DNA of 37,502 nt from Octopus bimaculoides. Lineage: Eukaryota. Shown here one piece after another: positions 17,321 through 37,502 of this stretch. Made by a program: the position numbers and the translations under genes. Numbering within the stretch: position 1 is the stretch's first letter; each line of letters opens with the position of its first letter. The notes beneath the pieces were generated by a model. It was not told where the DNA came from and made no database searches. It saw nothing but the letters and a program-made list of their open reading frames with translations. Location: the NCBI RefSeq assembly GCF_001194135.2, contig NC_068986.1, forward strand, positions 73,227,661-73,265,162. Direction: 5' to 3'.

Positions 17321-17371
17321 GTCATCATCATCATCATCATCATTATCATTATTATTATTACTATTATTATC
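17285..17371. repeat. Compound (TCA)n/(TTA)n microsatellite
   Basis: Read directly from the sequence. Confidence 0.95.

Positions 17372-17584: not shown

Positions 17585-17666
<82 letters not shown>
17585..17666. repeat. (ATT)27 microsatellite (SINE tail)
   Basis: Read directly from the sequence. Confidence 0.95.
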
Positions 17667-17668
<2 letters not shown>

Positions 17669-18095
17669 CTCTATTAATAACTAGATGGTTATACATTGAT
17701 TGTTTCATATATTTATAGTAAATAATCGTAGTCTCAAAGTGTGAAAAAAAGTCAGCAAATATTGCAAAATAAATTAATTAAAATTGAATGTGATTCGATA
17801 ACATATTTAGATTAATGTTCCGAAAACCTGTTTTACTCAATAACCAAACGCAAATATACAAATAAATAAAAAAACGAATGAAGAAGCACAAATATTGATC
17901 TTATTGAAATATGTTAAATAAAGAAATATAAAAATGACATGGATAAAAGCAAACAAATGTAGATTAAGATAATTGTGATTTTAATTTGTGTGAAACGTCA
18001 TAAAAATTTGGGACTTGTAATTAATAATTGGATGGTTAAGTAATTAATTAAATTCTTTATTCCCATGATATATATTGTCAACATACTAAATTTTT

Positions 18096-19170
<1,075 letters not shown>

Positions 19171-19629
19171 TACACACACACAATATCATGTTGTGGCATG
19201 TGTGCCTACCACAAGTGGTGGTAAATGTTTACGAAATTTGCTAATGAAGGTTAATATTAGAATAGTGTATTCCGAAATGAGTTTAACGTACAGGCAGAAG
19301 CCCAATTTTGTAACCAGCTCCAAGTTTCTTAATAGGTCGTCATCCAGTGTTGTTTTTGTTGTTGTGTAGACAGACCTGACCTAAGATGACAGTCCACATT
19401 TTGTAATGTTAGGTTTTCATATACAGTGGTTTCTGTATTCCATGGCGCATAAGACACTTTACGATTCGTTTATAATGCTGAAACACGGAGTAGATAAAGC
19501 TATAATAATGATAGCGTATAAATACTGGTTTGAAAAACGTTATTATTTATCTCATCTGCTTCGAGTTTTAATATTAAATATGATATATTTCGCATTTTTC
19601 GGAGCTATTTAATTCTTATGACGTAAACA

Positions 19630-19634
<5 letters not shown>

Positions 19635-19693
<59 letters not shown>
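19635..19693. repeat. (CA)n microsatellite abutting a gap
   Basis: Read directly from the sequence. Confidence 0.95.
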
Positions 19694-20094
19694 NNNNNNN
19701 NNNNNNNNNNNNNNNNNNNNNNNNNNNNNNNNNNNNNNNNNNNNNNNNNNNNNNNNNNNNNNNNNNNNNNNNNNNNNNNNNNNNNNNNNNNNNNNNNNNN
19801 NNNNNNNNNNNNNNNNNNNNNNNNNNNNNNNNNNNNNNNNNNNNNNNNNNNNNNNNNNNNNNNNNNNNNNNNNNNNNNNNNNNNNNNNNNNNNNNNNNNN
19901 NNNNNNNNNNNNNNNNNNNNNNNNNNNNNNNNNNNNNNNNNNNNNNNNNNNNNNNNNNNNNNNNNNNNNNNNNNNNNNNNNNNNNNNNNNNNNNNNNNNN
20001 NNNNNNNNNNNNNNNNNNNNNNNNNNNNNNNNNNNNNNNNNNNNNNNNNNNNNNNNNNNNNNNNNNNNNNNNNNNNNNNAATCGGAAGTATCTG

Positions 20095-20472
20095 AATGCG
20101 TGTCCGCGCCATATATCCATCAACCCATCAATCATTGCCCAAAAATGGAAGATCCCATATATAGAGAGTTGGCTTGCCGAAACGACACATTGCTTCCCTT
20201 TCTTTATCCTCGCTGAAACTCACATAAACAGCGCACATATGGATGCCGAAGTAAAAATAAAAGATTTCACCATCGTCTGTGCAGATCGTACAGACCGAAA
20301 TAAAGGGGGGCAGCCATCTTTCTCCATGACTCCTTTTCAGTTGATGCCAAGGACGTATTTTCCAATGGCTATTGTGAATCCATATCAGTATTCAACATGG
20401 CCAAAGACATAATCATTGTTGGTCTTTACAGGCCTCCTCAAGCACTTCTAAAGTGTTTTGAAGAGTGCCTCA
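20095..20472 (+). mobile_element. LINE apurinic-like endonuclease (APE) fragment, CR1/L2-like
   Basis: Translation from 20143: KWKIPYIESWL..FILAETHI..DAEVKIKDFTIVCADRTDRNKGG, then (frameshift) AIFLHD..SNGYCES..IIVGLYRPP. Not in the ORF track. Confidence 0.75.
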
Positions 20473-21759
20473 ACATGCTCTTCATGTTTAAATCTTCATG
20501 TCTTTTTAACCCTTTTTCTCTTGCATATTTACTTTAACTCCCACTCTTACCCAATCTCTGCCTTCCTAGAATCTTTTATCTTACTTTCCCTCTTTCTCTC
20601 TCTCTTTCTCTTTTAGTTTCTTTCTTTCTCTAGTTTTATCTCTGTTTCTCATATTTTCACTCTTTATCTCTTCTCTGATCACCCACTCTCAGTCTCGTCC
20701 CCTCTGTCTATGTATCTTTCTCTATTCACCATTCTCAGTACCAAAATAATTCCCGCACCCCACCCCACACCCACTACCATAACTACCACCTGTTTATTTC
20801 TCTTTTTATTTGAGTTAGTTCCTTTAGCGCTACACAAAGCAAGTTGTAACGGACTGTTGTATTAATATATAGATCATTAGCCTTATATTCTAATATTTAC
20901 CGTCTATTACAACTGGTCAGTTTGTTGCTAACAATTCATTCATTTTCATTGTGAAAAACCTCCGTTATTTCATCAATATCATTCCTTTCTTTCACCGCAC
21001 AGTTGTCTTAAGCGTTAAGATTTTCTATATCTATTGCTTTCAGAGAAAAGCATGCGAGTCTTTAGGAACAACGCTATCCATTTATTCTACTTGTCGCTTT
21101 ATATTGTCTTTATATTGTCCATTTTAATGTTATATATCATCGTTACTATACTCCTGAGCTGTTATTACGGTGTATTTAGTCTCTCTTTTTAAGTTCCATC
21201 TATTTTCAGTCGTTTGAATTAGCTTGCCTTCAACATACTGTCTGAGATGTATTTTCTTCAATCTACGTTTTTCTAAACTATTATTTTCATTCAATCTTTT
21301 CAATTACCGAGATTTTTTTTTATTTCGCACTTTTTGTCTTTCCGTGATCTATTAATTCGATGCTCCGAAGTTCATCCCACTTTCTTCTATAACTTCAGGT
21401 CATATATCTTATAACCTCTCTATTATTATTCTCTTTATGCTTTCCTTTATATTTTGTACTCTGTGGCCAACTTAACACTCCCTCCTCTTCTCTCTTCCCC
21501 CTCTCTCCTCTCTGTGTTTTTCTCGTCATAAGTTTTTTGCAGTAAATGGTAAATTGGCAGAACAATGAACACAAAATGACTTACAGCCTGAATTTAAATC
21601 TTCCTCAACCAGAGTCCATTTAACTCTTCATTCTTTTGGCTTTGATAAAATAAATTTCGGCCATGTGAAGGGAGTCTATTAAATTAGTTGCATTCTCCCA
21701 CCACATTTGTGTTCATGTGCCTAGGGAAGATGCGGAGTGGCCGAATCGGCACCAAGACC

Positions 21760-21850
21760 GATCGGTACTTTGTTCCACCTATTTATGCTCTAAGTTTAAT
21801 TCTCGCTGAATTCGACTTCCTCTTTCATCTTTTTGGGTCGATAAAATACA
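21760..21850 (+). mobile_element. Degenerate S1 SINE fragment
   Basis: CTAAGTTTAATTCTCGCTGAATTCGACTT..TTTCATCTTTTTGGGTCGATAAAATA resembles the S1 B-box and core. Confidence 0.5.
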
Positions 21851-21959
21851 CCGATGGAATGGAAGATTTCGAAGGGAGAACAAGTTGAAGAATTTATAAG
21901 AATTTGCTGGAATAAACATCCATAACTAACCTGAAGGACGGATCGTCCATTCATCCAAC

Positions 21960-24517
21960 ATTACCTTACTCAGAACAGGCAGCGTGAATGCACGTGGCCT
22001 GGGTCACATTGGAAGAAGTAGCATCTGCTCAACGACTTCAGATCATTAGCCATGGATGTGGTGGACATCAGTGAAACCAAAATTACCGAGCCACGAGCTA
22101 GCTTTCACGCCCACTTTCGACGGCTACGAGGCGTACACATCTCCAAGTCCATTGAGAACGGGAGGCACAGTCGCTGTGTTGTTTCAGAAAGTCTGTTCCC
22201 GGACTCAGAAGTTTAACTCAGGACTGTTGGACACGACCAGCAACAAAGGCCATACCATCTGTCTTGTAGGGGTGGGGCAGTCAGATTTCTTCAGGTGTCT
22301 AGAGTCTTTCTTAGGAACATATCGTCTTTTATAGCTAGCGTGTGGTTTGATTGGTATCTTGGATACATGACGGGGTTTTGTGAGGCTAGCCAATAGAAGA
22401 GGGGAGTACAAACCTGCTAAGACGTTTCCAGCAGTCTAACAGGCACCGGCTGGATATCTAGAATGTGCCATCCAACAGTCTGACAGGTACCGATTGAATA
22501 TCCAGAATATGCCACTGGGAAAATGGACAAATTACATCCGTAATTTAGATTTATCTAGATAGAATATTCTGTGGAGTACTTGATAGGGTTAGCATATGTT
22601 GTCCACGATTCAGAGTGATCAGCTACACAAGTGGTTCTCAACCGGGGTCCGTATGATCCTTGGGGGTCCATATAAAATTTTGCTGTTAAAATCTATGTGC
22701 AATAAACTGGTTATGCTTCAACAATACACAAATTGTTATAGCAATATTTTAAATGCAATTTCTAATGATATTTAATTATCAAAATGCAATAGGATTTTGT
22801 AAACATTGAATGGTTAGGAGTGTACAACCGAATAAAATTGGAATCAGGGGTTTATAGGTAAAGAAAAAAAGATGGTTGAGAATCATTAAGTTACATATGC
22901 CATCAATTTGACCTCTGTGCGCTCAACCTAGGCAGGTTTCGTAGGCAGGGGCCTGATTATTGGGAAGCTGAATGAGTTACAGAGGCCGGATTAATCAAGT
23001 GATTTTTGCGGAAGTTGACAGGGACAATCACCAGCAACAAATGATGGTCCACCATGAAAAGTGCGATTAGAATAGGATTGATTTTTTGTTAGAAACTTGA
23101 AAGTGTCGCTTGGAAAAGGCATCTCAGCTGACGTTCTTGCTACGAGATTGAACCTATATCAATTCTTCAAAGCGGAGCAGCAAGGCTGCGTTGTCGTAAG
23201 TAAGGCACGTGTTCTAAAACATGAAGGAACGAATCAACCAAAATTAATCAGGAAATGCCGATGGATTTACAGTTCAGTCCATGTTGTTCAACAGCAGACA
23301 GACGGACCAGTTGCATAGGCTACGGCTTGGTCTAGTTCACCTGAAGAAGGACTAGGATGAAGTGACGACCAGGGTGACCGGTCTCACCCAGAAATAGATG
23401 GAGAGGAAGCCATCCCCGAACAGCCGGGCAGAGGCAATGAACGCCTATATCGCTCCCGTCACCAATTACCACCTGACCGTCGTACCTTGCACAAGTTCAC
23501 ATTCGACCGGAATGGTGTATCTGCTCTTCTATTATTATTATTTTTGGACAGAATGTATTCCACTGGTCAGGCGTTCCATTCGCTATCTTCACCTGCTGCG
23601 AGGAGGACTGGGCATATCATATTGATGCACGGAGATGTGATAAGGCTGCGACATCTCCGACATTTCCTTGATGGTGAATAGGTGTGATCGTCGTTTGCTA
23701 GACGTGTTTTCTTCCAGCTAAACCATGAAACGACAGCGACAGGTGCTTGATATTCAGAATGTCATCAAGTTCACACAACCTTCTGAGCAATGCAGTAGGT
23801 AGACGTTCCACGTTTGCGATCAACTAAAGATTAATGGTGGGAAAAAGTGAGGGTGTTCTTGAGGAGACTCAGAGCATCGATGAAAATCAATTGGCTGGTC
23901 CTGGTCCTGGCACCAGAGTGGGGGCATTACTGGTTCGTAATGATCTCTACAGACATATAAGTGCCGTCAACCAGTCCTGTTCGAGATGCGCACAGAACAA
24001 CGAAACTGTTAAGCACGCACTCGTTCAGTGACCTACCATTGCTGACTTGTAGAATTATGTGGAACAGTTGCTATGATGTGTAGAACGGATCCAGCTATCA
24101 GCTGAGTTCATTGTGAAGATCATCTCACCACCTTCCTTTGTTGATGAGGAGAACCAGTTTTTATATGTCAGATGACCTAAGCAAAAGAACTTGCATGGTA
24201 GACAAAACTAAAAAGGGCTTAAGGCAGTTACCTTCTTCTTTAGCCAAGCCCTCGACTCTGAACATGCGCCTGTAGGCTGGAGAACAACTGGGAGAAAGTA
24301 CTTGCATTTATTCTTAGTGGATGACCGTGGTTTTGTGGCGTTTCCACGACTAGTCCCCGGAAATCGCCTTATTTTTGGGAAATTTTCTTTTTCTGAATTT
24401 TCTTTTTTGTTGCTTTTAGCATTTTTTTTTGTTTTCACCTTTTATATAGTCCAAAACTTTAACGCCTTGAACTGTCTTCGATTTTTTTGTCAACCCTTGC
24501 TGGTTTATAAAGAAAAC
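21960..24517 (+). mobile_element. L1/Tx1-type ORF2 remnant with 3' UTR; most of the RT domain absent
   Basis: APE motifs: LRTGSVNARGL, LLNDFRSLAMDVVDISETK, GGTVAVLF and LDRI. Post-RT motifs: TDGPV, RAEAMNAYI, PLVRRS..GGLG and LRHLRHFL. Zinc finger CSRC..NETVKHA at ~23968-24030. A T-rich 3' UTR ends ATAAAGAAAAC plus (ATT)n. Confidence 0.8.
22629..22888. mobile_element. hAT (Charlie-like) MITE inserted into the Tx1 ORF2
   Basis: TIRs AAGTGGTTCTCAACC and GGTTGAGAATCATTA. Degenerate 8-bp TSD AGCTACAC (22621-22628) / AGTTACAT (22889-22896). Confidence 0.75.
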
Positions 24518-24556
24518 ATTATTATTATTATTGTTGTTGTTGCTGTTATTATTATT

Positions 24557-24885
24557 CAGTAGTCTTTCACTGCACTACCAAGCACAGCTCTGTGTGCCTT
24601 TGGTATGAGCTGCGGTTTGTTGTGATGCTCTTATTTACGCTGTACTGAAAGTGTTTTACGTTGGATGTGTGCGGTGCCTAGTAGTGCTATTTTCTGTATG
24701 TTATATATACTTGCTAGTCCTGGTGTTTTTGTTAGGTATTTGTCTGAATATATTTTTATCATACATTACGCGCCGACTATGATAGGAATTATTTCTGTTT
24801 TTAGACTCCACATTCGGGTTACCTCTATTTCCAAATCTTTGCATTTTGATAGTTTCTCCATTTCTTTTAGAGAAACGTTGTCATC

Positions 24886-24887
<2 letters not shown>
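24557..24887 (-). mobile_element. 5'-truncated R4/Dong-type 3' end, family A/B (copy A)
   Basis: DDNVSLKEMEKLSKCKDLEIEVTRMWSLKTEIIPIIVGA plus a 3' UTR homologous to 25674-26020. (TTA)n on both sides. Confidence 0.85.

Positions 24888-24966
<79 letters not shown>
24888..24966. repeat. (TTA)n microsatellite
   Basis: Read directly from the sequence. Confidence 0.95.
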
Positions 24967-24967
<1 letters not shown>

Positions 24968-24971
24968 TTTA

Positions 24972-25077
24972 TTCCGCCGCGGTCGACTTTGCCTTCATCC
25001 TTTCGGGGTCGATAAATTAATCGACTCATCCCCTCCCCGCCAAAATTGCTGCTCTTGCGGCAAAATTTGAAACTGTT
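24972..25077 (+). mobile_element. S1 SINE fragment (5'-truncated, internally deleted)
   Basis: TTCCGCCGCGGTCGACTTTGCCTTCATCCTTTCGGGGTCGATAAATTAA..CAAAATTTGAAAC. Confidence 0.75.
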
Positions 25078-25098
25078 ATCCTCATTATTATTATTATT

Positions 25099-25652
25099 GA
25101 GCGAGAGAGCAGTACATGCCATCAAAGTGACACTGGGGTAAAATAAACGAAGCCCAATATACCCATCATGACTACCCGTCTGATAAGGGTACACTAGGCA
25201 CATGCACCACAACCATATGTCTGCGACATGGTTTGTCTCATATCAAGATAATCATCGCATGACCTTGCTAGTGGGGCCCAGTTAGAATTTTCTTCAGGTC
25301 GAGTAGCCCATCCCGCTCAAAAGGTCCCTGAATAAGGGTTGTTTAAGGATGTTGCACGAAATACCCATGTTTTCAAAGGTGAATTATCCAAACGCCAAAG
25401 GATTCCTCTTAACACATGGCTATGATGCTCCCTCACTACTTCTGCTCGTGATCAGAGATGCACATCTCGTCAGCTACTAAGAGACATGCTCAACTGGCTA
25501 AGGTCAAACAACTGACAAGCAAATCTGTGGTATTAAGCAGAATATTTGCTGTAGCCCATCTTTTATACCAAGACAAAACAATGTACGTGATAACACTTCC
25601 AATCAGTTAAGATCAGAAGCTATGAGAGCCACTGCTTGGTACTGCATCAAGG
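25099..25652. mobile_element. ~550-bp non-coding interspersed repeat flanked by (TTA)n (copy 2)
   Basis: Homologous to 16790-17284, with (ATT)n at 25084-25098 and 25656-25673. Confidence 0.8.
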
Positions 25653-25673
25653 TATATTATTATTATTATTATT

Positions 25674-26185
25674 GTTCAGTAGTTTTATTTTTATAGCGTG
25701 CTTTCACTTCACTACCGAGCGCAGCTCTGTGTGCCTTGGGTATGTGCTGTGGTTTGCTGTGGTGCTCTTATGGTTACTGTATTGAAAGTGTTTTGCGTAG
25801 GATGTGTGCAGTGCCCAGTAGTGCAATTTTCTGTATGTTATATATATTTGTAAGTCCTGGTGTTTTTGTTATGTATTTGTCTGAATATTTTTTATTATAC
25901 CTAAGGCACCTACTATGATAGGAATTGTTTCTGTTTTTAGATTCCACATTCGAGTTACCTCTATTTCCAGGTCTTTGTATTTTGAAAGTTTTTCCATTTC
26001 TTTTAGGGAAACGTTGTCATCTGCTGGTATTGATACATCAATTAGAAAGCATTTTTTTTCTTCATGATCTTTGACAACTATATCTGGTCTATTTGCCTTA
26101 ATTTCTCTATCTGTGTGTATTGGCATATCCCAAAGTATGGTTGCTTTCTCGTTTTCTGTGACCTTTTCTGGCGTGTGTTTATACC
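25674..26185 (-). mobile_element. 5'-truncated R4/Dong-type 3' end, family A/B (copy B)
   Basis: LWDMPIHTDREIKANRPDIVVKD..CFLIDVSIPADDNVSLKEMEKLSKYKDL..IPIIVGALG (RLE). (TTA)n at both ends (25656-25673 and 26186-26220). Confidence 0.9.
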
Positions 26186-26188
26186 TTA

Positions 26189-26220
<32 letters not shown>

Positions 26221-26941
26221 CCCTCCGGAATACGTAAAACGTTTTTCCGAACATGCTTCGTAAGTTATGCTTTAAACTGTGTTTTTCACCCTGTCTTTAC
26301 AAAATAAATGTTATAAATTTTTATCATAAACTAATAATAAGAACACCAGGAACCTTTGGGCAGGTGTTCGGTGGTTGTTTCTGCCCCGTAAGGGGTAGTA
26401 TTTATTCATTTAATTATCTATTGCACTCAGAAAACACCCATCTTGTGCAAAATACACAAGATGGCGTCGTCATCATCACCATTACCATCGGCATCAGCGA
26501 CCATCATGGGAGCGTTGAGTAAGAAAGCCGTTCTTCCTCCCCCAATAGAAGATACCTCCCCACCTCATATCACTCACTCCTAGCGACAACAACAACAACA
26601 ACAGCAGCCTAAGCAATGTGAAAGCTCCCAAACCAAGACTCCATCTCCCCTCTCTTAAGCACACACTCACACAGTGACGCTCACACAAATACAGACTCAC
26701 ACACGCCGAGACTGATTCCACAGACACTGGTGCCTCCACATTGCGCAGCGAAGACGAGGAAGAGCCACAAAAAGCAAAAAAAATAAACAAAAAACAACCC
26801 CAAAAGACAACTCAAAAGAAAAAAGTACCTGGCCTCGCACTAACAATAGAATGTTCCAGAACAAAGGCAACAGACATATCTAAAACAACGCCAGCCCCAC
26901 CATTGCTGGCCTTGTGCCAAAATTTGAAACAATTATCATAA

Positions 26942-27155
26942 GGACAGTGAGTTCGTAGAATCATTAGAATGCCGGACAAAAATGCTTAGTGTCATTCCCT
27001 TCGGCTATTAACATTTCGAGTTCAAATCCTGCTGACGTCAACTTCGCCTTTCAGCGCTCTGGAGGCGATAAGATAAAGTACCAGTTAAATACTGGAATCG
27101 ATGTAATCATCTAAGCATTTCGAAACTGTTGGCCTTGTGCATTAATCAGAAGCCT
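26942..27155 (+). mobile_element. Degenerate S1 SINE
   Basis: GAGTTCAAATCC B box, AAGTACCAGTT and GGCCTTGTGC tail. Preceded by another S1 tail at ~26895-26935. Confidence 0.65.
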
Positions 27156-27167
27156 TTATTTTAAAAA

Positions 27168-27365
27168 AGCGTCGAGCTGGCAGAATCCTTGGATAAAATG
27201 CTAAGCAACATTTCTTCTGGCTTTTTACGTTCTGAGTTCAAATGCCACCGGGATCCACTTTGCGTTCTCCCTTTCGGCATCGATAACAACAGTGCCAGCT
27301 GAGTACTGAAGCTGACCTCCTCCCACTAAAATTGCTTGTCTTGTGCCAAAATTGGAAACAATTAA
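27168..27365 (+). mobile_element. Degenerate S1 SINE
   Basis: GCGTCGAGCTGGCAGAATC..TTACGTTCTGAGTTCAAATGCC..CTTGTGCCAAAATTGGAAAC. Confidence 0.7.
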
Positions 27366-28721
27366 CATTATTGCGTTGTTTTTGTCGGCTTGAACGGACG
27401 TGTTTTTTTCTCGGTCTTTCTGTTGATATTTGGAGTACGAGTTGTTTTTTCCAGGAATTTTGTTGCACAACTTTGGATTTATTAATTGTTTTTGTCACGT
27501 AGCAGATATTTACAAGTCAAGTTGTTTTATTTCATTGAATTTACCAAAAAAGACGAAAAAGAAAAACCTCTTTTTGTTGGACATTTGCTCGACTTCATTC
27601 ACAATGGCGTCGAGCAACGCCTCCTCAAGCAAGAATGAAAATAGAATTTCTGCCTCTGCCATGCTAAATAATAACAAATCTAATTTGTCAAAGTTTTCCC
27701 CTGTCATAAACAGGGAAAGTTTTTGCATTTTCAGAAAAGAAACATTTTTTTTTTTTTTTTGAATGTTGAGACATTTTTTTCGGCGACGATACAAATGACA
27801 ACAACAAATGTCGTCGTTAATACATGGAGTTAGTGTTGCCTAAGTTGCCTCCAGTATTTCAATAACCGATATGCAAAAGATAAGACTGAAACGCAGCTGT
27901 GGAAAAATTATATTGACAAGAACATTATCTCTTTGCTCGAGAAATACACTGAAAAACGAGCAAGGAGAAATTTCATATACCTTTGTCTCACAAAAGGATT
28001 TCCATTCCCCACAAAACAAAAATTAAAGACACGTGGGCCAATATTATTGATATTGAAAAAGGAAAGCCTACAGTATTGTCTGTTTGACTTTCAGAACAGA
28101 AGACGAGTCCCGTAAACAAGCAGAGAATGGGTCCGAAACACCGGCTTATAAGCTTGTGTGTTTGTACATGAAGCAGCGTAACACAGAATAAACAGTGAGA
28201 GGTATAGCGAGCGACATTAAATCCTGGTTAGTCGTTGCTTTTGTAAAGTAATATGAACGAGTGGTGAGTGTATAAAAAAAAAAAAATTATAGGTGGCTGG
28301 AAGACGGCTAGCTGGCAGAATCTTCTGTCACTTCTCGTCCTAGGTTACAAATACTTTTACGGTACTTTCTATCAGTACGAGTTGGCAGATGAGGTTATGT
28401 AACAGAGGTAGAAAATAGTGAAGCATTCCTTCTAATAGCTGTACTCCATCCAATTGCGAGGATGGGGAGGAACTGCATCCTTAAAAAGAACGGAAGACAG
28501 TAGAAAAGAGAAGGAAATGAAATACGAGACAAAATATCCCAAACTGGCAGACACGTGGTTTCAAAAACTTAACGAATGCGTTAACACACGATACGAAAAC
28601 TTTCTTCCAAGAGGTTAGTGTCATTTTGTTTTTTAAGCTTTTTTATACATATATAATTTATCATTTTTGTTTTTAAAAATCTGTCTCCAAACACGCAATC
28701 TAATATATAATGTGTGTGTAC

Positions 28722-28935
28722 AAAGGCGGCGATCTAGCAAAATCGTTATCACTCCGGGCAAAATGCTTAGTGGCATTTCGACCATCTTTACGTTCTGAAT
28801 TCAAATTCCGCCGAGATCGACTTTCATCCTTTCGAGGTCGATAAAATAAGTACCAGTTGAGCACTGGACTGGGGTCGATGTAATGTACTTATCTCGTCGC
28901 CCGAAGGTGCTGACCTGTTCCAAAATTTGAAACCA
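28722..28935 (+). mobile_element. S1 SINE
   Basis: AAGGCGGCGATCT..TTACGTTCTGAATTCAAATTCC..TTTCATCCTTTCGAGGTCGATAAAATAAGTACCAGTT. Confidence 0.8.
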
Positions 28936-29638
28936 ATATATACGCGTGTGAACATGTGTCCATACATACGGACAGACAAACAGCAGGCATCTGCTGAACG
29001 GAGTTAAACAGGAATCACTACGTTGCAAAGCGAATTTGTTAAAAACTCACCGACGCCTATAACCCGTATAGCTACTTTCTGAAACATATTCGTGTTTAGT
29101 CTCAGTAACATTGTGCTGGTGTTTTCTCAGAAGCAATAGTGTTGTGTATCAAGTCAGTTGAATCAATCAAAATAAAATGAGATTTCCGATATGGTAAAGA
29201 CTGTAATTCTAAAGAACTGACTTAATTCAATACACAGTGTAAATTCTTAACATCTCAACTCTCACCTACACAACTTTATAATAGCTAGATACTGCTATAT
29301 CAATCACTAAGACGCTATTATTATTATTGCCATGGATAATTATGTTATTTGTTGTATGTAAGCTTGTAATTCATCTACAAAACTTTACTTTTGTATTGCC
29401 ATAATCGAAGAAGTTCGTTCGTAGAAGTTCTCTTAAACTAAGTTAAAAAGCTGTAATTTGTCAGTCAGTACTTCATATGGCAATTTTACTAAATGATTAT
29501 ATATTTGCGTATACTTAATAGTGATTGAGAGAATGGACAACGAGATAGTATATATTGTTGTTTAGCCCTAGGTCTATTGCGATCAAGTAGACCTTTGATC
29601 AGAGGTATTCCAGTCGTGTCTATTCTGTTATTTGAACT

Positions 29639-29789
29639 TAGACACGGGCAATCTTTTTCTAAAACGGGTCGCATGAGCATAGTTAATTAGGCGGGTTGCA
29701 CTACAAAAAATAAGATAAATAAATAAATGATAAATAAATAAAAAAATCAAGATAATTTTTCATTAGACGCACCATTCAGAAAATCCCGC
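29639..29789. mobile_element. Old hAT MITE 'A', left part (right part now at 31316-31346, inverted)
   Basis: TAGACACGGGCAATCT..GGGTCGCATGAG is a Charlie-like end. The matching end CTGCCCTGGGCAAACTAC is at 31316. Confidence 0.65.
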
Positions 29790-30342
29790 GGATCTTTTTT
29801 AAAACGGGGGCCACATTTTTCATTAATGTTTTACGTAGTGTTTTTGGTACCGAAAGACTTTCAAACTTCGTATACTTATCTATTTTGTGTTATAGAACAG
29901 AAAAATATTTTTGTATTCGAATTTATTTCATGTAAAAAATTGTCTTATTTCGATAATTTCAACCAATCACTGACAAGTATTCAGTTGTTTATATTTACTC
30001 CTTTGGCTGATTAAGCGGTGTAAAGCGTATTTAATTTCCATAGCTTCGTTTTGCTTTTTTCTTTTTAAATTTGCTGTTTAACCCTAACCCTATCACCGAT
30101 AGAATTGTTTCAGAATCGTTTGTTTATGTAGTCGGCACTTAATGTATATCGGCTGAATGGACGTCAGTGATTGGTTGAAATTACAGAAATACGACAACTT
30201 TAACATGGAATAACTTAGGGATTTCTTTTTTTTTAAAGAAGACTAAGAGAAAAAGATGTTTTATATGACACATTTTACCAGTGTTCCAAGTTTCAAAGTG
30301 TTTCGTTAATGAAAAATGTGGCTCCCGTTTTAAAAAAGATCC
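29790..30342 (+). mobile_element. Young MITE with GG termini, ~37-bp TIR and internal TAACCC repeats (copy 1)
   Basis: GGATCTTTTTTAAAACGGGGGCCACATTTTTCATTAA at the left end and its reverse complement (1 mismatch) at the right end. About 99% identical to the reverse complement of 31347-31917. Strand is assigned only relative to copy 2. Confidence 0.92.
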
Positions 30343-30402
30343 AATTTTTATTTTAGGTGTGCCATTCATAAAGTCCCGTGAGCCGCAGTTTTCCCGTGGC
30401 TG
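30343..30402. mobile_element. Old hAT MITE 'B', displaced half
   Basis: Ends GCCGCAGTTTTCCCGTGGCTG (hAT-type end). The partner half is 31918-32015. Confidence 0.65.
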
Positions 30403-31315
30403 ATGTAGAATATTAGATAGAAAAAGAGATAGCCAGATACATCGACTGTAACCTTTCCGTTATAAGCTGAAACTTAATATAGAAACTAGTTTGTAAATTT
30501 AAAGTTTCTTTAACATTGTCAAATTAAATAGTTTCCAAATGTCGTTTCGTCTGGACAATTACAGAAAGCTGACATCTGGAAGAGTCGACTAGAGAGTCTA
30601 TTTCCGTGAAAGGAATCAGGATAACTACATCTAAAAGGAATGAAAGAAAACAATTGTGTGAAGACAGTGAAATTGGTGTTTAACATTTTCTTTCAAATCC
30701 ACTTACGTTTTTATGCCATCAAAATCTCATTAAAATAGTAAAACTATTATTACTACCATTAAACGATTTGCAACAGAGGCGATAATATAGTTCAATATAT
30801 AATATACGTGTAGCATTGAACAGAATACAATTAGGTTTAATTGATTACAACATGAAAAATTTATTGAAGTCCCACTTTAACCAATCAGACATTCCAACTT
30901 AAAAATAACGGTACAATTTAAGGTTGTGTTTATTAATGTTACACTCAACCTTTGAGACTCACGAGAAACCCCTGCTGCGTACAATTGTAGAATATGATGG
31001 CAAAAGTAAAGCAGTAAATCAATTATTAGTACAACAGCAAATAATGATTTGTTCTCGCTAGAAATTCGGTTACATACTCAATATTTGAAGTCAAGACAGT
31101 ATTTAAACTGGACAGACAACCGAGAGAAATAAGCAATTACACAATTATGCTTTTACAAAACCATTATTTTCTTCCGCTGACTGTAATGGAGGTAAAGAAA
31201 ATTCCACTATGTGGTCACTTGATCTACTAGAAATAGCAGTCAAATCTCTCTCAAATATCATATGAAGATGGAAATATGGAAATATTAAAACAATGAAGTC
31301 CTTCTTAACCTTTAA

Positions 31316-31346
31316 CTGCCCTGGGCAAACTACTGTCCGCGGAATT
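31316..31346. mobile_element. Old hAT MITE 'A', displaced right end
   Basis: The reverse complement AATTCCGCGGACAGTAGTTTGCCCAGGGCAG continues 29789 colinearly with the equivalent end of MITE B. Confidence 0.6.
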
Positions 31347-31917
31347 GGATCTTTTTTAAAACGGGGGCCACATTTTTCATTAACGAAACACTTTGAAACT
31401 TGGAACACTGGTAGAATGTGTCATATAAAACATCTTTTTCTCTTAGTCTTCTTAAAAAAAAAAGAAATCCCTAAGTTATTCCATGTTAAAGTTGTCGTAT
31501 TTCTGTAATTTAAACCAATCACTGACGTTCATTCAGCCGATATACATTAAGTGCCGACTACATAAACAAACGATTCTGAAACAATTCTATCGGTGATAGG
31601 GTAAGGGTTAGGTTTAGGGTTAGGGTAAAACAGCAAATTTAAAAAGAAAAAAGAAAAACGAAGCTATGGAAATTAAATACGCTTTACACCGCTTAATCAG
31701 CCAAAGGAGTAAATATAAACAACTGAATACTTGTCAGTGATTGGTTGAAATTATCGAAATAAGACAATTTTTTACATGAAATAAATTCGAATACAAAAAT
31801 ATTTTTCTGTTCTATAACACAAAATAGATAAGTATACGAAGTTTGAAAGTCTTTCGGTACCAAAAACACTACGTAAAACATTAATGAAAAATGTGGCCCC
31901 CGTTTTAAAAAAGATCC
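31347..31917 (-). mobile_element. Young MITE with GG termini (copy 2, inverted)
   Basis: Same TIRs as copy 1. The ORF track shows identical peptides at 29826-30014(+) and 31693-31881(-). It has a longer TTAGGG-like tract at ~31597-31626. Confidence 0.92.
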
Positions 31918-32015
31918 TAAAAATTACCTCGAATTTTTATTTTAGTAGTCCAGCCTGGCTGATTATGAACCATGCCTCATGCGGCCCGCTTCATGGAAAA
32001 GGTTGCCCGTACCTG
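31918..32015. mobile_element. Old hAT MITE 'B', outer half
   Basis: Ends CTCATGCGGCCC..AAAAGGTTGCCCGTACCTG. The reverse complement aligns with 29639-29720. Confidence 0.7.
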
Positions 32016-33277
32016 CTCTAAATTATCACCTTCAGATATTTCGGTGAGATTGGAATTCACTACTATAGCATTGTTGTGGACTTTTTCATTGTTTTCTTCG
32101 TATAGTCAATAGTTGTTGTTGATAGGGTTAGATGGGATGTCAATGACAGAAGTAACAGAACCATCTATGCCAAAATGTGTGACTTGTGCCAGTTCCGATC
32201 TTAATAAACTGTTATGATTTTTGGATTCAGTAAAAACTTCACACTTTTTGAAAACAGAAGCACGTTATTGGACGTCCCTGTTTCTTTGCTAAAACTCTTC
32301 CGAGTATTTTGATGTCGGAATTGTTAAGAAAAAGGTTCAGGTTTCTCTGAGTTTTGAAGATCAAGCTCGCTGTTGCTGCTGTTAGTCTCTATTCTAATTA
32401 CGTCACACGCAACTTTCTCCTGTCACAATGACATTACTAGAGTGTGTGCTGCTCGGAGCAGCCCTTAAGTTTGCTGCTCTCGCCCCTATACAAGCTTATA
32501 CAGTAACTCAATAGTGTCTGTTGTCAACTCTCAAACGATCTTTGTAGATTAGACCGTTTGAAAGTTGGCAACAGACTCAACGTAGTTGCTAGGGGCAGAA
32601 TACTAGTCTCCAGTCATTCAGTTGCCCAATATCTTATCGACATGGTATTCCACACTTGCTTATTTTTACTTTGGAATTATTGTTACTTTTGTCATTGTCT
32701 TTTGTTGTTTCCCTGTTGTTGTTCATTTTGCTGCTGTTATAGCAGTTACTGCCGCTTCTGTAGTTGCTTCGGTTATAGAAATTTCTGTGGTCCTGTTCAC
32801 TCCAGGAATTTCCTTCTGTATCACATTGGTAAAAGCAGAATAAACAAGACTACATCAACCTCCACCCTACCATCAGGTTTGTTGGATTTAGAATTACACT
32901 ATACAATATCTTCTTCCTTTTTCAAGATAGTAAGATATTATTTGAGAGACATTTGGTTGCTGTTTTTATCGGGTCAAAACCGCGCGACAGTTCCTTCGTT
33001 GGTTTGAAATTGCCATTTTGTGTTTGCTGCCGCCATGATTAAGTCTTGTCTTCAGAGTTGTTATTGGTGTTGACGATAACATCAGAGTCAATCACTGTAG
33101 AACTGTATGTTGTGACCCAAACATATATAGAAAATACAGCAGCAATATCCCCATTCCTGAATCTCCCACTGAGCAACAGGATCGGAAAGGGTTATCCAAT
33201 ACCAAACAATTTTATTGGCATTTCTGTCATAAACCAGAAAGAAACGCATTATTTGTGATGTTCTTATATTGTCTATT

Positions 33278-33663
33278 GTGGAGGCGCAATGGCCCAGTGG
33301 TTAGGGCAGCGGATTTGCGGTCATAGGATCGCGGTTTCGATTCTCAGACCGGGCGTTGTAAGTGTTTATTGAGCGAAAACACCTAAAGCTCCACGAGGCT
33401 CCGGCAGGGGATGGTGGCGAACCCTGCTGTACTCTTTCACCACAACTTTCTCTCACTCATACTTCCTGTTTCTGTTGTGCCTGTAATTCAAAGGGTCAGC
33501 CTTGTCACACTGTGTCACGCTGAATATCCCCGGGAACTACGTTAAGGGTACACGTGTCTGTGGAGCGCTCAGCCACTAGCACGTTAATTTCACGAGCAGG
33601 CTGTTCCGTTGATCGGATCAACTGGAACCCTCGACGTCGTAAGCGACGGAGTGCCAACAACAC
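33278..33663 (+). mobile_element. Full-length tRNA-derived SINE (group S2, tail type A) with 11-bp TSD
   Basis: A box TGGCCCAGTGG and B-box-like GTTTCGATTCT. TSD TATTGTCTATT at 33267-33277 and 33664-33674. Confidence 0.92.
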
Positions 33664-34753
33664 TATTGTCTATTAAAAAGAGACGATCAACCGTTGCTGG
33701 AGCACCTTTGATCAGAGGTAACGTGGTTAAATAATCACAATATACAATATATCGTAAACAGTTACAACTATTTAAATTGAAGTTGATTAGATTCGTTTAC
33801 AAATTCAAACGACTTCGAATTTTCGCATGTAGTCATAAAAGTTGGTTCTTTTCGGTTTGGAACCTTCAATGTAGAAATTCTTTCTATCCATGTTAAAAAA
33901 ATGTCCGAAATATTGAAGAGAGATTAAATGTAAACATATTTAGTTTTCATTCTATTTAGTAAAACATTGTTATGTCATTAAATGAACATTTATTTGAAGA
34001 GTTAGTTCTCTAAAACTTTCTAGTCTTAATATCAGAACAACTCCTGTTGCAATAGATACTTCGAGTACAGATATTATAGCAAATGTTTATACGTAGGATG
34101 TTTAGCTATAATTTATTCTTTATTTCTTTTTCTTGAGATCAAATTTTTAAGTAAATATGTACAGCTAGTAGTTTTTAAATATCATTTACACATTTATATA
34201 TTTAATTTGTTTTCTTTTAAATAAATGTCCTATTATTGTTTTTCTAATTTCACTGCTCGCAAAAATTTTGAGGAAGTCGGATGTTATAAACGATGCCGTA
34301 ATAGCGCCACCTATTTTCTACTGAATAAAGATTTACACCTTGTATTAAGTAACATAAGCGGTTATTGTGTTTAGTTATCCAAGCGAAATTTCGTCTTTTA
34401 TGGTCATTCCTGTATTATAATTACGACAGAAGCAAAAGGTTAATTATTGTATTCAGAACATTTTGAAGATTAGTTATGTGTTAAACAAGTTGAAAGTATA
34501 TGAAAGCCATAGTTGTTTACTCTAAAAGCTCTATTTCTTTCTTGTGTTTGAATCACCTGCTCAATGTAAATACATTAATATTTGAAAAATATTTACTCTT
34601 TCGTTACATTCTTCAGCATTTTTCATGAAAAATTGTTATGTATACAAGAAATTTAGTCAAAAATTTACATATTATGGGAATTTTTCCCCATCTAAAAAAT
34701 ATGGCTTCCGAAGAAAACACAAACTTGCTTTTGTTTTTTTTGGGTATCCCTTG

Positions 34754-34793
<40 letters not shown>

Positions 34794-35299
34794 CGTGTGC
34801 GTGCGTGCGTGTAGTATTTCTCCTTAATGTGATATCAACATTAAATAAACTTGAGTGTGTTTGTTATTAAAACTTGTTCACCATCACTTATCAGGCGATG
34901 TCTGGTACTTAATTTCTATATCTTTTAGCGAGCAGAATCGATACAGAATTACACCTAAGAATTATCAGTTCATATATGGCGAGGCCCATGTAACCGTGGC
35001 TAAAGTAATACAAACTGGTCCAATACACTAAGCTGTGAATGCGTTCTTAGTAATCACACAACACAGAGTTCACACCATAAGTAGCTGGACTACACCATCA
35101 AGTGACATTGACTAATAATTCTTAGTTGAATATTCCTTCAGCCAAAAGCCATCATAGAGAGGGATCTTAAAGAGAAAAAAACGCGACTACTGACGACATC
35201 ACCATTAAAACACTGTAATGCTTCAAGATGAATAACCCGGTTGGCGAACACACACATACAATACTCCACACGTACTCAAGCACCCCCCCACACACATTT

Positions 35300-37109
35300 T
35301 GGAATTTAGCCAAAAGAAATGTTCATATTTGGTTATAGAACGAGGAAGCCCCAAACCCAAAACCTGTGCTTTTCTTTTCTACTCTAGACACAAGGTCCAA
35401 AATTTTTTGGGAGAGAACCAGTCGATTAGATCAACCCCAGTACGTAACTGGTACTTAATTTATCGACCCTGAAAGGATGAAAAGCAAAGTCGACCTCGGT
35501 GGAATTTGAACTCAGAACGTAAAGACAGACGAAATACCACTAATAATTTTACCCAGCATGCTAACGTTTCTGCCAGCTCACCGCCTTAAACCTGTGCATC
35601 AACCGTCTCTTTATCTCCCCCATTTCACACAAAGAATGTTACAAGTGCCTAGGCATAAACGAAAATGTATCATATGAAGACACTAAATAAAAATAGTGAC
35701 GCGAAAATATTACACCAGAAAATATGGCAGTCGGAACTCTGCTCTGATAACAAAACAATATCCCACAATGCATTTACAGTACCAGGGCTGAACCCAACAT
35801 TTGAGATACTTGATTGGTGTGTTGAGGAAATCCACTCCATAGATATCAAAACTCGCAAAATGCTGACAACAACTGGGAACTTCCACTGAAACAATGATGT
35901 TGACAGGCTCTACCTAAGAAGAAATGAAGGTGGTAGAGGCCTGAGATCAGTGCAGACGTGCTTCGAATGCTGTATGATATCACTCAGGCAGCACCTGCTA
36001 AACAACAGCAGCAAAAATAAATATATAAATGTAGTGCTGAAAAGTGAAGTGAGCAGCACTGTACGAGTTGGCAGTGAACTCCTCAAGAAATACTCTCTTC
36101 CTGATGATATCCTATACAGCCTCAAAACAGCTAGTCTCTCTTACCTCAGAGAAGATCTGGAGGGAAAGCACTTGGCATACAGAAAAAAAAACAACGACGA
36201 ACAAACAAAAAACAACTATACATGAATATGTTGCCCGGAAGCTTGAAGAAGACAGCAGAATTGACACGAAGCGCAGCCTCTGTTGGACACAAGACCACTA
36301 CATCACATAACACTTTGAAGGCTATGCGTTTGCAATCCTGGAACAGGAGTTTGCCACAAAGTACCTGGTGAAAAAGAGAGACAGTGACGCTCTTCTGATC
36401 CCAAGGTGCAACCGCATGTGTAGGCTATGTCATGTTTCTTTGAAAGACATCACGCATGTGATTAGGAGCTGTCCTAAAATGTCGTCGAGGTACTACCTTC
36501 CTGTGCAGCATGATGTTGTTAGTAAAACAATTTACTATGCCATCAGCAAAAAAAAGGACTGTCCTGAAATAAACTTAGAAAATCCCTCTGTTATGGAATA
36601 CATTCATAAACACCAACTCAAGGAATCCTGGTGGAATATTCCCATCAAAACCTCTGGCAAATGTAAACATAACTGGCCAGATATTGTTGTTTGGGACAGC
36701 GGGGCAAAGGTATGTATCATCATAGAGGTTAGCTGCCCTGCAGATATAAATATCTCTTTGAAAAGCAAAGAAAAAGAGGATATTTATGGACAACTGCTTC
36801 GAAACCTCCAGCTTCTATATCCAGGCTATGAATTCATATTCATACTAATAATAATTGGAGCACTAAGTTTTGTTAGTAAATGCTTAAAGATGAATCTGGA
36901 TAAACTGAGATTTTCAGAAAGAGAAATCGACCGGCTAATTCGTACAAGTGCAATCTGTGAGTGGAACAGTAAAAATATGCACGACTTTTCTCAAGTTCCA
37001 AATGTGAATTTGTCTGTTTTATCTACATCCCAAAGATGGAGATTTGTATCTTTGTTGGAAACCGGCTCCCTGCGCAGTGGAAGATTTATGATATTTAAAA
37101 GATAGAAGA
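35300..37109 (+). mobile_element. 5'-truncated R4/Dong-type retrotransposon (end of RT, CCHC, RLE), family D, defective
   Basis: KKCSYLVIERG, ECYKCLGINEN, DVDRLYLRRNEGGRGL, CRLC..KDITHVIRSC and WPDIVV..IEVSCPAD. Multiple stops and frameshifts. The 3' end runs into CATACATA at 37110. Confidence 0.9.
35370..35587 (-). mobile_element. Full-length S1 SINE inserted into the Dong-type RT region, 10-bp TSD
   Basis: Minus strand AAGGCGGTGAGCTGGCAGAAACGTTAGC..GAGTTCAAATTCC. TSD AAACCTGTGC at 35360-35369 and 35588-35597. Confidence 0.92.
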
Positions 37110-37171
37110 CATACATATGTGCGTACGTAGTGTGTGTGTGTGTGTGTGTGTGTGACTATATATATATATAT
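37110..37171. repeat. Compound CATA/(GT)/(TA) microsatellite between two convergent retroelement 3' ends
   Basis: Read directly from the sequence. Confidence 0.9.
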
Positions 37172-37502
37172 GGTGGTTGTCTACTCCTTAAACAGAGTTT
37201 GACCACCTCCTGCACCTACACCTTAGCCCTTTCATGGCGTCTGATGTGGCTTTTTAAACCAGACAGTGTTTTGAAAAAACACCCACACAGATTGCACCTC
37301 TGATTTGCACTACCAATACCTGCAAGTAAGTTCTGCTCATTGTGGATCCTAACATGTCTTTGAAGACCCCCATTGGATTTGCAAACCCTCTGGCACACAC
37401 CACATTCAAACGTGTGCACAGACATATAATCAGAATAGCTGGGTGAGGTTTGTTTTTCATGGGTTCGCAGGTGAGATTTGAGGCCAGCCAAGGACAGACA
37501 TG
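37172..37502 (-). mobile_element. C2H2 zinc-finger-encoding 3' end, probably RTE-like LINE ORF2 C-terminus (continues beyond window)
   Basis: ORF 37216-37491 has one partial and two complete fingers (CGVCQRVCKSNGGLQRHVRIH, CNLCGCFFKTLSGLKSHIRRH) without TGEKP linkers. A stop, ~45-nt 3' UTR and microsatellite follow. Confidence 0.6.

What the first reader, a model, noticed from the sequence alone, without database searches (positions are those of the whole stretch)
29639..32023. Swapped target-site duplications reveal a 1-kb inversion between two near-identical inverted MITEs
Seen in sequence: neither MITE has matching flanks, but the flanks match crosswise. 30343-30350 AATTTTTA equals the reverse complement of 31918-31925 (8/8). 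29782-29789 AATCCCGC matches the reverse complement of 31339-31346, AATTCCGC (7/8). Flipping 30343-31346 restores an 8-bp TSD around each MITE and rejoins two split hAT MITEs (A ~174 bp, B ~150 bp) whose ends then align with each other. It also restores B's own TSD (TTCTACAT vs CTCTAAAT, 6/8, NTCTANAN-like). A's TSD remains poor (4/8). Established: exchanged TSDs are the signature of recombination between inverted TE copies. Inference: this is a recent, possibly polymorphic or flip-flopping inversion, or the assembler mis-oriented the spacer between ~99% identical repeats.
Basis: partly seen in the sequence, partly recalled or inferred. Interest (0 to 1): 0.8.

Follow-up and report, generated by a model that had tools for sequence, protein, structure and literature searches.

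The report
Small inversion between two inverted transposon copies
Two near-identical inverted copies of a 0.55-kb non-coding transposon bracket a 1-kb segment that lies flipped relative to its ancestral orientation; this kind of transposon-mediated micro-inversion is well known, touches no recognisable gene here, and cannot yet be told apart from a scaffolding error.

Summary
M1 (29790-30342) and M2 (31347-31917, inverted) share perfect 37-bp terminal inverted repeats (TIRs). Their 8-bp flanks match crosswise (8/8 and 7/8) but not within a copy (3/8, 4/8). The joint chance probability is about 6e-8.

Flipping 30343-31346 in silico rebuilds two older hAT-like MITEs, A (174 bp) and B (150 bp). 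They then align end to end, and each junction across an M insertion site is collinear with uninterrupted sequence in the other element. Nothing is lost or gained. The printed sequence is therefore almost certainly inverted relative to the ancestral arrangement.

The cause is not settled:
- Ectopic recombination between two inverted M copies, my preferred reading (about 0.42).
- One-step hybrid-element (sister-chromatid) aberrant transposition, which gives the same picture (about 0.22).
- Mis-orientation of the inner 1.6-kb piece by a short-read scaffolder (about 0.28). The window has nine N gaps, and the outer 263 bp of the two copies are 100% identical.

No orthologous locus, reads or further M copies could be reached with these tools. 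The segment holds no recognisable gene. This is a new member of a known kind (Galileo inversions in Drosophila, Ds-pair inversions in rice), and interest is modest.

The parts
29631..29638 (.). 8-mer left of element A (TTTGAACT), candidate TSD of A
   Evidence: Matches rc(31308-31315) TTAAAGGT at only 4/8, which is not significant.
29639..29789 (+). Element A, left 151 bp: long arm starting TAGACACGGGCAA, an AT-rich microsatellite, and most of the short arm. It is interrupted by M1.
   Evidence: Terminus motif found. Collinear with rc(B).
29782..29789 (+). TSD 'a' of the M insertion into A (AATCCCGC)
   Evidence: 7/8 match with rc(31339-31346).
29790..30342 (+). M1: 553-bp non-coding foldback element with 37-bp TIRs (GGATCTTTTTTAAAACGGGGGCCACATTTTTCATTAA) and an internal (CCCTAA)n tract at 30078-30093
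   Evidence: DNA fold -98 kcal/mol, z = -12.9.
29790..30052 (+). Outer 263 bp of M1, 100% identical to the outer 263 bp of M2 (31655-31917, reverse strand)
   Evidence: All 7 substitutions and the indel lie at M positions 264 and above.
30343..31346 (.). The inverted segment (1004 bp, the minimal extent). If the exchange lay inside the identical tract, the flipped piece extends to 30053-31654.
   Evidence: Flipping it restores both 8-bp TSDs and rebuilds A and B.
30343..30350 (+). rc of TSD 'b' (AATTTTTA), now next to M1
   Evidence: 8/8 match with rc(31918-31925).
30343..30402 (-). Element B, short arm (read on the minus strand: CAGCCACGGGAAAAC...TAAAAATT), displaced next to M1
   Evidence: Terminus found. 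Collinear with the rebuilt right end of A.
30403..30410 (-). Left TSD of B (rc = TTCTACAT)
   Evidence: 6/8 match with 32016-32023 CTCTAAAT. Both fit nnnTAnnn (consensus from PMC3517528).
30411..31307 (.). Unique spacer, 897 bp, 31% GC, longest ORF 55 aa, with no recognisable gene, RNA or repeat
31308..31315 (-). 8-mer beside A's right tip (rc = TTAAAGGT), candidate right TSD of A
31316..31346 (-). Element A, right 23-bp tip (31316-31338) plus TSD a' (31339-31346), displaced next to M2
   Evidence: rc(31316-31338) continues A collinearly with B's uninterrupted short arm.
31339..31346 (-). rc of TSD 'a' (GCGGAATT, rc AATTCCGC), with one transition relative to 29782-29789
31347..31917 (-). M2: 571-bp copy of M in inverted orientation, with its (TTAGGG)-like tract at 31597-31628 being 18 bp longer than in M1
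31918..31925 (+). TSD 'b' of the M insertion into B (TAAAAATT)
31926..32015 (+). Element B, right 90 bp (long arm, ending ...TTGCCCGTACCTG)
32016..32023 (+). Right TSD of B (CTCTAAAT)

Best explanation
The locus is a nested-transposon site with a transposon-mediated micro-inversion.

Inferred history:
1. Two related hAT-like MITEs, A and B, sat about 0.9 kb apart in opposite orientation.
2. A 0.55-kb foldback element, M, inserted into each of them. It entered A 23 bp from the tip of its short arm and B near its centre. Each insertion made an 8-bp target duplication, and the two M copies were inverted relative to each other. The second copy probably arose by a local hop.
3. Intrachromosomal homologous (ectopic) recombination between the two inverted M copies then flipped everything between them. 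One copy of each duplication, the tip of A and the short arm of B were carried to the opposite M copy.
4. The 263-bp stretch of perfect identity in the outer halves of M is read as the gene-conversion or exchange tract.

What is shown: the crosswise duplications, the loss-free rebuilding of A and B, and the uneven spread of differences between the copies.

What is inferred: that the inversion exists in the organism (about 0.7), and that recombination rather than aberrant transposition made it (about 0.6 of that).
For: - Crosswise flanks match 8/8 and 7/8, against 3/8 and 4/8 within a copy. Joint chance is about 6e-8.
- The restored A (174 bp) aligns end to end with rc of the restored B (150 bp), score 151.5. 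Both junctions across the M insertion sites are collinear with uninterrupted sequence in the partner element.
- The printed arrangement instead gives a 211-bp element with about 1.6 short arms and a 129-bp element with about 0.4 of one, score 110.5.
- B's own TSD rises from 2-3/8 to 6/8 on restoration.
- There is no deletion or duplication at the breakpoints.
- All 7 substitutions and the 18-bp indel between M1 and M2 lie at M positions 264 and above. Positions 1-263 are identical. P = 0.011 if differences were spread uniformly, which fits a conversion or exchange tract.
- Precedents: exchanged TSDs at Galileo-mediated Drosophila inversions (PMC2775673). In rice, homologous recombination between two close inverted Ds elements inverted the inter-transposon segment in 33 of 300 plants (PMC3239180 and PMC3429523).
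Against: - Chimerism of the two copies is the feature that separates recombination from hybrid element insertion. It cannot be tested, because no other close M copy is available. The only other relative, at 9175-9673, is 81% identical and truncated.
- Recombination needs three events (two insertions within 1 kb, then an exchange), whereas aberrant transposition needs two.
- The window is a short-read scaffold with nine N gaps. A 263-bp exact inverted repeat is exactly where a scaffolder can mis-orient the enclosed piece.
- No reads, second assembly or orthologous locus could be obtained.
Confidence: 0.42

Rival explanations
1. Assembly artefact. The organism has the 'restored' orientation. A short-read assembler or scaffolder placed the inner piece (the variable inner halves of M plus the spacer, about 30053-31654) backwards between two copies of a collapsed 263-bp exact repeat.
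For: - The window is a scaffold with nine N gaps of estimated sizes (10-745 bp), all next to microsatellites. That indicates short reads plus mate pairs.
- The outer 263 bp of the two M copies are 100% identical while the inner halves differ at 2.4%. In a de Bruijn graph both traversals of such an inverted repeat are valid.
- Mis-orientation at the identical tract gives exactly the observed crosswise pattern.
Against: - The region 20080-37502 is gap-free.
- The ambiguity spans only 263 bp, which ordinary 300-500-bp paired-end inserts bridge.
- The assembler did keep seven single-base differences and an 18-bp indel apart, so it was not simply collapsing the copies.
- None of this is decisive.
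Confidence: 0.28
2. One-step aberrant transposition (hybrid element insertion, a sister-chromatid event). A single M in A (or in B) used its left end on one sister chromatid and its right end on the other. It inserted about 1 kb away in the other MITE. This created the second M copy, the second 8-bp duplication and the inversion all at once. It is the eukaryotic analogue of replicative inversion by bacterial transposons.
For: - It yields the same final structure. Delprat et al. state that the outcome is 'strikingly similar' to ectopic recombination apart from chimerism (PMC2775673).
- It needs fewer events.
- It explains why two copies of a family that is otherwise rare in this window lie 1 kb apart, inverted, and about 99% identical.
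Against: - The copies are not identical (7 substitutions plus an indel), and the differences are clustered (P = 0.011) rather than spread as expected for mutations arising after the event. Later gene conversion could mimic this.
- Natural examples are scarce.
- From my own knowledge, strand-selective competence is thought to disfavour single-element sister-chromatid events in Ac-type hAT elements.
Confidence: 0.22
3. Transposase cut at the two inner M ends, and the released spacer was re-ligated backwards by end joining, without any exchange between the M copies.
For: The flipped piece would be exactly 30343-31346, with breakpoints at the M termini, as observed. [quoted passage not shown]
Against: Both junctions are clean. 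There is no footprint, deletion or filler, and the only mismatch is an internal transition three bases from the junction. From my own knowledge, hAT-type excision normally leaves footprints on the flanks.
Confidence: 0.04
4. No inversion. The printed arrangement is ancestral, and the crosswise matches arise from chance, from a composite element, or from an extended inverted duplication.
For: A and B are homologous and partly palindromic, so some cross-similarity of the flanks is expected. For example, the 14-bp AATTTTTATTTTAG occurs at both 30343 and 31932 (D9).
Against: - Joint chance is about 6e-8.
- An extended inverted duplication predicts left flank matching left flank, which is not seen (3/8 and 4/8).
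- A composite 'long arm - M - short arm' element is excluded. M sits 23 bp from the short-arm tip in one copy and about 60 bp from it in the other. The printed arrangement also leaves one element with a duplicated short arm and the other lacking it.
Confidence: 0.03

Closest known systems
Galileo-mediated natural inversions of Drosophila buzzatii (2j, 2q7, 2z3), generated by ectopic recombination (Delprat et al. 2009, PMC2775673)
   Same: Two copies of one foldback-like DNA transposon lie in opposite orientation at the two breakpoints. The target-site duplications are exchanged, and nothing is lost or gained at the breakpoints.
   Different: - Scale: 1 kb here against megabases there.
- No standard-arrangement chromosome is available here, so the ancestral state is inferred from the rebuilt host MITEs instead.
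- Chimerism of the copies was shown for 2z3 and could not be tested here.
- The TSD is 8 bp rather than 7 bp, and the element family is different.
[quoted passage not shown] 2011, PMC3239180; PMC3429523)
   Same: A closely spaced inverted pair of non-autonomous elements, where the segment between them flips by recombination. That pair itself arose from a single element by local transposition.
   Different: That system is experimental, tissue-culture-induced and verified by PCR. This case is a single natural sequence from an unknown animal, the elements are 0.55 kb rather than 5.9 kb, and the orientation is unverified.
Hybrid element insertion / sister-chromatid transposition (P element, Ac/Ds), and replicative inversion by bacterial IS/Tn elements
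   Same: These give an identical end product: an inverted segment bracketed by two inverted copies, with the old and new target duplications distributed crosswise (the bacterial case is from my own knowledge).
   Different: These mechanisms predict copies that are identical at birth. Here the copies differ at 7 sites plus an indel, in a clustered pattern, which is inconclusive.
Mis-oriented small contigs between inverted repeats in short-read scaffolds
   Same: An exact 263-bp inverted repeat flanks a 1.6-kb piece in a gapped scaffold.
   Different: The local sequence is gap-free and the variant inner halves were resolved. There is no direct sign of a join.

Membership tests
TE-mediated inversion by ectopic recombination between inverted copies | Two copies of the same element, in opposite orientation, one at each breakpoint | tested here: met
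   M1 29790-30342 (+) and M2 31347-31917 (-), 98.7% identical.
TE-mediated inversion by ectopic recombination between inverted copies | Exchanged target-site duplications | tested here: met
   8/8 and 7/8 crosswise, 3/8 and 4/8 within a copy, joint chance about 6e-8.
TE-mediated inversion by ectopic recombination between inverted copies | A single copy of each target sequence, and contiguous flanks, in the non-inverted arrangement | tested here: met
   No standard chromosome is available. As a surrogate, in-silico reversal rebuilds A and B, and each is collinear with the other across the insertion site with one copy of the 8-mer.
TE-mediated inversion by ectopic recombination between inverted copies | No deletion or duplication at the breakpoints | tested here: met
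   Rebuilt A (174 bp) and B (150 bp) are complete from terminus to terminus.
TE-mediated inversion by ectopic recombination between inverted copies | Both copies are reciprocal chimeras of the two parental copies | tested here: inconclusive
   Differences are clustered: none in positions 1-263 and seven in positions 264-553, P = 0.011. No parental-type copies exist to polarise them. The one outgroup, at 9175-9673, shows derived changes in both copies.
TE-mediated inversion by ectopic recombination between inverted copies | The inverted arrangement exists in the organism | not testable with these tools
   No reads, second assembly or orthologue could be reached. The window is a gapped short-read scaffold.
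Hybrid element insertion (one-step aberrant transposition) | The two flanking copies are identical (not chimeric) at origin | tested here: inconclusive
   There are 7 substitutions and an 18-bp indel, which could all post-date the event. The clustering argues weakly against this.
hAT-superfamily MITE (elements A and B) | 8-bp target-site duplication | tested here: inconclusive
   B: TTCTACAT/CTCTAAAT, 6/8 (P = 0.007). A: 4/8 (P = 0.14). Both.
hAT-superfamily MITE (elements A and B) | Short TIRs (5-27 bp) with a YAG-type terminus, and no coding capacity | tested here: met
   Termini are TAGACACGGGCAA, CAGCCACGGGAAA and CAGGTACGGGCAA. A fourth, CTGCCCTGGGCAA, is degenerate. The elements are 150-174 bp. 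Criteria are from PMC3517528.
hAT-superfamily MITE (elements A and B) | Target consensus nnnTAnnn (Buster) or nTnnnnAn (Ac) | tested here: met
   Both copies of B's TSD fit both consensus patterns. A's do not. This rests on a single informative insertion.
hAT-superfamily MITE (elements A and B) | Related autonomous element encoding a hAT transposase | not testable with these tools
   No genome of the source organism is available.
hAT-superfamily MITE (element M) | 8-bp target-site duplication | tested here: met
   Met after reversal: 8/8 and 7/8, and the matches stop at 8 bp.
hAT-superfamily MITE (element M) | Short TIRs (5-27 bp), YAG-type terminus, hAT target consensus | tested here: not met
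   The TIR is 37 bp and starts GGATC. The TSDs AATCCCGC and TAAAAATT fit neither consensus. However, M TIR positions 3-36 resemble positions 13-51 of A's long arm (shuffle p < 0.001), so a shared transposase remains plausible.

The most novel reading that the evidence does not exclude
Either of two readings remains open:
- The 1-kb segment is a naturally flip-flopping, polymorphic invertible segment in an animal genome, kept recombination-competent by gene conversion between its 0.55-kb inverted arms.
- It is a rare natural footprint of one-step hybrid-element (sister-chromatid) transposition by a hAT-like MITE, creating a new copy and an inversion in a single event.
Probability: 0.2. Interest if true: 0.5.

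Novelty: new member of a known kind. Interest (0 to 1): 0.3.

Why it matters
If real, this is a clean natural example of a transposon pair remodelling DNA at the kilobase scale. It has an unusual built-in control: the two older MITEs that were split and can be rebuilt give the ancestral state without a second genome.

It would be a useful orientation-polymorphism marker. It would also be a test case for telling recombination from aberrant transposition.

No gene, RNA or regulatory feature could be recognised in or next to the flipped segment, so no functional consequence is expected. If it is a scaffolding error, it only flags a local mis-orientation to be fixed in the assembly.

Tried and rejected
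**Searches that led nowhere**
- Exact look-up of two ORFs, one spanning the spacer/M2 junction (87 aa) and one inside M (62 aa), to find the same locus or other M copies in public assemblies: nothing on record.
- Homologue search with a 245-aa retroelement ORF to identify the organism. It returned only 9 distant hits (70% identity or less) from metagenome contigs.
- Two metagenome scans, one with the M TIR and one with the most conserved internal 29-mer: no hits.
- Literature search for the TIR strings: none.
- Rfam, tRNA and Pfam scans gave nothing that bears on the locus.
- More copies of M or of the A/B family in the window: only one truncated relative, 81% identical, at 9175-9673. It lacks a usable TIR or TSD.

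**Models rejected**
- Simple extension of the inverted repeat into the flanks. This predicts the wrong pairing.
- Two copies of a composite 'hAT arm - M - hAT arm' element. M sits at different positions in A and B, and the printed arrangement has 1.6 and 0.4 short arms.
- A prokaryote-style site-specific invertible switch. This is eukaryotic repeat-rich DNA, the arms are 0.55 kb, and no recombinase ORF was seen.
Full report
**What is in the sequence**

The window is AT-rich (33% GC), microsatellite-rich eukaryotic DNA. It carries retroelement fragments and nine N gaps, all within 1-20079. It is therefore a short-read scaffold, and the part holding the finding (20080-37502) is gap-free.

At 29790-30342 (M1, 553 bp) and 31347-31917 (M2, 571 bp, opposite strand) lie two copies of a non-coding element.
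- Both have perfect 37-bp terminal inverted repeats, GGATCTTTTTTAAAACGGGGGCCACATTTTTCATTAA.
- M is a long foldback: DNA fold -98 kcal/mol, z = -12.9 against shuffles.
- M carries an internal telomere-like (CCCTAA)n tract.
- The copies differ by 7 substitutions and an 18-bp indel in that tract.

**Checking the observation**

The four 8-mers flanking the copies are exactly as reported. With both copies read in the orientation of M, copy 1 is AATCCCGC[M]AATTTTTA and copy 2 is AATTTTTA[M]AATTCCGC.
- The left flank of each copy equals the right flank of the other (8/8 and 7/8).
- Flanks of the same copy match only 3/8 and 4/8.
- This is a true crosswise pattern, not the inverted repeat running a few bases further out.
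- Random 8-mer pairs from the same DNA give 8/8 with probability 4e-5 and 7/8 or better with probability 7e-4. The joint chance is about 6e-8.
- The matches stop at 8 bp.

**An independent control from the host elements**

The sequence around the M copies consists of pieces of two older, related MITEs. Their termini are TAGACACGGGCAA (29639), CAGCCACGGGAAA (30402, minus strand), CAGGTACGGGCAA (32015, minus strand) and a degenerate CTGCCCTGGGCAA (31316).

I reversed 30343-31346 in silico and removed M plus one copy of each 8-mer. The result:
- Element A is 174 bp (29639-29789 plus rc 31316-31338).
- Element B is 150 bp (rc 30343-30402 plus 31926-32015).
- A aligns with the reverse complement of B from terminus to terminus. 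The only large gap is an AT-rich microsatellite expansion in A.
- The junction of A across its M site (…CCATTCAGAAAATCCCGC|GGACAGTAGTTTGCCC…) runs collinear with uninterrupted sequence in B (…CCATTCATAAAGTCCCGTGAGCCGCAGTTTTCCC…).
- The junction of B (…CTAAAATAAAAATT|ACCTCG…) runs collinear with uninterrupted sequence in A.

The printed arrangement instead gives one 211-bp element with the short arm present about 1.6 times and one 129-bp element with only its 23-bp tip. Alignment scores are 110.5 for the printed arrangement and 151.5 for the restored one.

B's own flanking 8-mers go from 2-3/8 to 6/8 on restoration (TTCTACAT/CTCTAAAT, chance 0.007). Both fit the hAT consensus nnnTAnnn (PMC3517528). 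A's remain 4/8, which is not significant.

These results exclude chance, a simple extended inverted duplication, and a composite 'arm-M-arm' element present in two copies. The printed sequence is inverted relative to the arrangement in which M inserted. I put this at about 0.97.

**How it may have arisen**

Three routes give exactly this end product.

*(a) Ectopic homologous recombination between two inverted M copies.*
- This is the classical reading of exchanged TSDs.
- Precedents are the Galileo inversions of Drosophila buzzatii (PMC2775673) and inversion of the segment between two close inverted Ds elements in rice, seen in 33 of 300 regenerated plants (PMC3239180 and PMC3429523).

*(b) Hybrid element insertion.*
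- The left end of a single M on one sister chromatid and the right end on the other insert together about 1 kb away.
- This creates the second copy, the second duplication and the inversion in one step.
- Delprat et al. state that the outcome is the same as for recombination, except that the copies are identical rather than chimeric.

*(c) Assembly error.*
- A scaffolder placed the inner piece backwards.

**Evidence bearing on the choice**

All seven substitutions (M positions 264, 297, 371, 388, 446, 486, 534) and the indel lie in the inner halves of the copies. The outer 263 bp (29790-30052 and 31655-31917) are identical. If differences were spread evenly, that has probability 0.011.
- Under (a) it is naturally read as the exchange or gene-conversion tract.
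- Under (b) it needs a later conversion event.
- Under (c) the exact 263-bp inverted repeat is precisely what makes the two traversals of an assembly graph equivalent. Ordinary 300-500-bp paired-end inserts would bridge it, however, and the assembler did keep the variable halves apart.

The only other family member in the window (9175-9673) is 81% identical and cut off by an N gap. It shows derived changes in both M1 (position 486) and M2 (position 388), which does not discriminate.

The chimerism test needs further M copies, and none could be reached.

My estimates are 0.42 for recombination, 0.22 for hybrid element insertion, 0.28 for mis-orientation, 0.04 for cut-and-religate, and 0.03 for no inversion.

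**What the elements are**

A and B meet the descriptive criteria of hAT-type MITEs: a YAG terminus, short TIRs, an 8-bp TSD (supported for B only) and no coding capacity.

M is less clear.
- Its 8-bp TSDs fit hAT.
- Its 37-bp TIR starting GGATC does not, and neither do its target sequences.
- Its TIR (positions 3-36) is significantly similar to positions 13-51 of A's long arm (shuffle p < 0.001), with repeated ACGGG motifs in all arms.
- The two families may therefore share a transposase, but I do not file M as hAT.

**Context and consequence**

The 897-bp unique spacer (30411-31307) is 31% GC. Its longest ORF is 55 aa, and it has no Rfam, tRNA or repeat match. Nothing suggests that the orientation matters functionally.

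**What could not be done**

The organism is unidentified.
- Junction-ORF look-ups found nothing.
- A protein search returned only distant metagenomic retroelement relatives.
- Two metagenome scans found nothing.
- A literature string search found nothing.

Consequently the decisive questions are open: whether the orientation is real, whether it is polymorphic, and whether the copies are chimeric.

**Verdict**

The phenomenon is a new instance of a well-known kind, with a substantial residual chance of being a scaffolding artefact. Interest is 0.3.

Noticed in passing
window 30078-30093 (M1), 31597-31628 (M2), 9175-9190 (third copy): The M family carries an internal telomere-like (TTAGGG/CCCTAA)n tract. 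It is three units (18 bp) longer in M2 than in M1. In the diverged third copy it abuts an N gap.
   Followed up: partly
window 29790-30052 and 31655-31917: The outer 263 bp of M1 and M2 are 100% identical, while the inner 290 bp differ at 7 sites plus an indel (P = 0.011 if uniform). This could be a gene-conversion or exchange tract, or a collapsed repeat contig used twice by the assembler.
   Followed up: partly
window 9175-9673: A third copy of the right half of M, about 81% identical, starting at an N gap. Its terminus is degenerate (…CCGTTCAAAGATC). It shows that the family is older than the M1/M2 pair.
   Followed up: partly
window 29651-29689 vs M TIR (29792-29825): The M TIR is significantly similar to the subterminal part of A's long arm (shuffle p < 0.001). 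ACGGG-type motifs recur in all arms of A, B and M. From memory this resembles the subterminal AAACGG transposase-binding repeats of Ac. I did not test that.
   Followed up: partly
window 1097-20079 (nine N runs of 10-745 bp): All gaps sit next to microsatellites ((TA)n, (TATG)n, (TCTA)n, (TG)n). This marks the source as a short-read scaffold, which is relevant to any structural claim in this window.
   Followed up: yes
window 543-921 and 36634-37105: Two copies, 93% identical over 300 bp, of the same retroelement tail lie at opposite ends of the window in direct orientation. The ORFs (118 and 245 aa) have no Pfam match and only distant metagenomic relatives.
   Followed up: partly
window 2021-3400 (-): Three consecutive minus-strand ORFs (164, 159 and 106 aa). 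The middle one has a weak CCHC zinc-knuckle match (E = 8e-4, below Pfam's cut-off). This is probably a gag-like remnant of a retroelement.
   Followed up: partly
window 37216-37491 (-): A 91-aa ORF with C2H2 zinc fingers (Pfam E = 6e-11) at the very end of the window. It may be an exon of a zinc-finger gene or part of a transposable element.
   Followed up: no
window 3701-3994; also 11430-11627 vs 12504-12701, and 24564-24895 vs 25701-26031: A 119-bp tandem repeat (2.5 copies), and two pairs of dispersed direct repeats (96% and 87-88% identical, each pair about 1.1 kb apart). These are probably further SINE- or MITE-like families.
   Followed up: no
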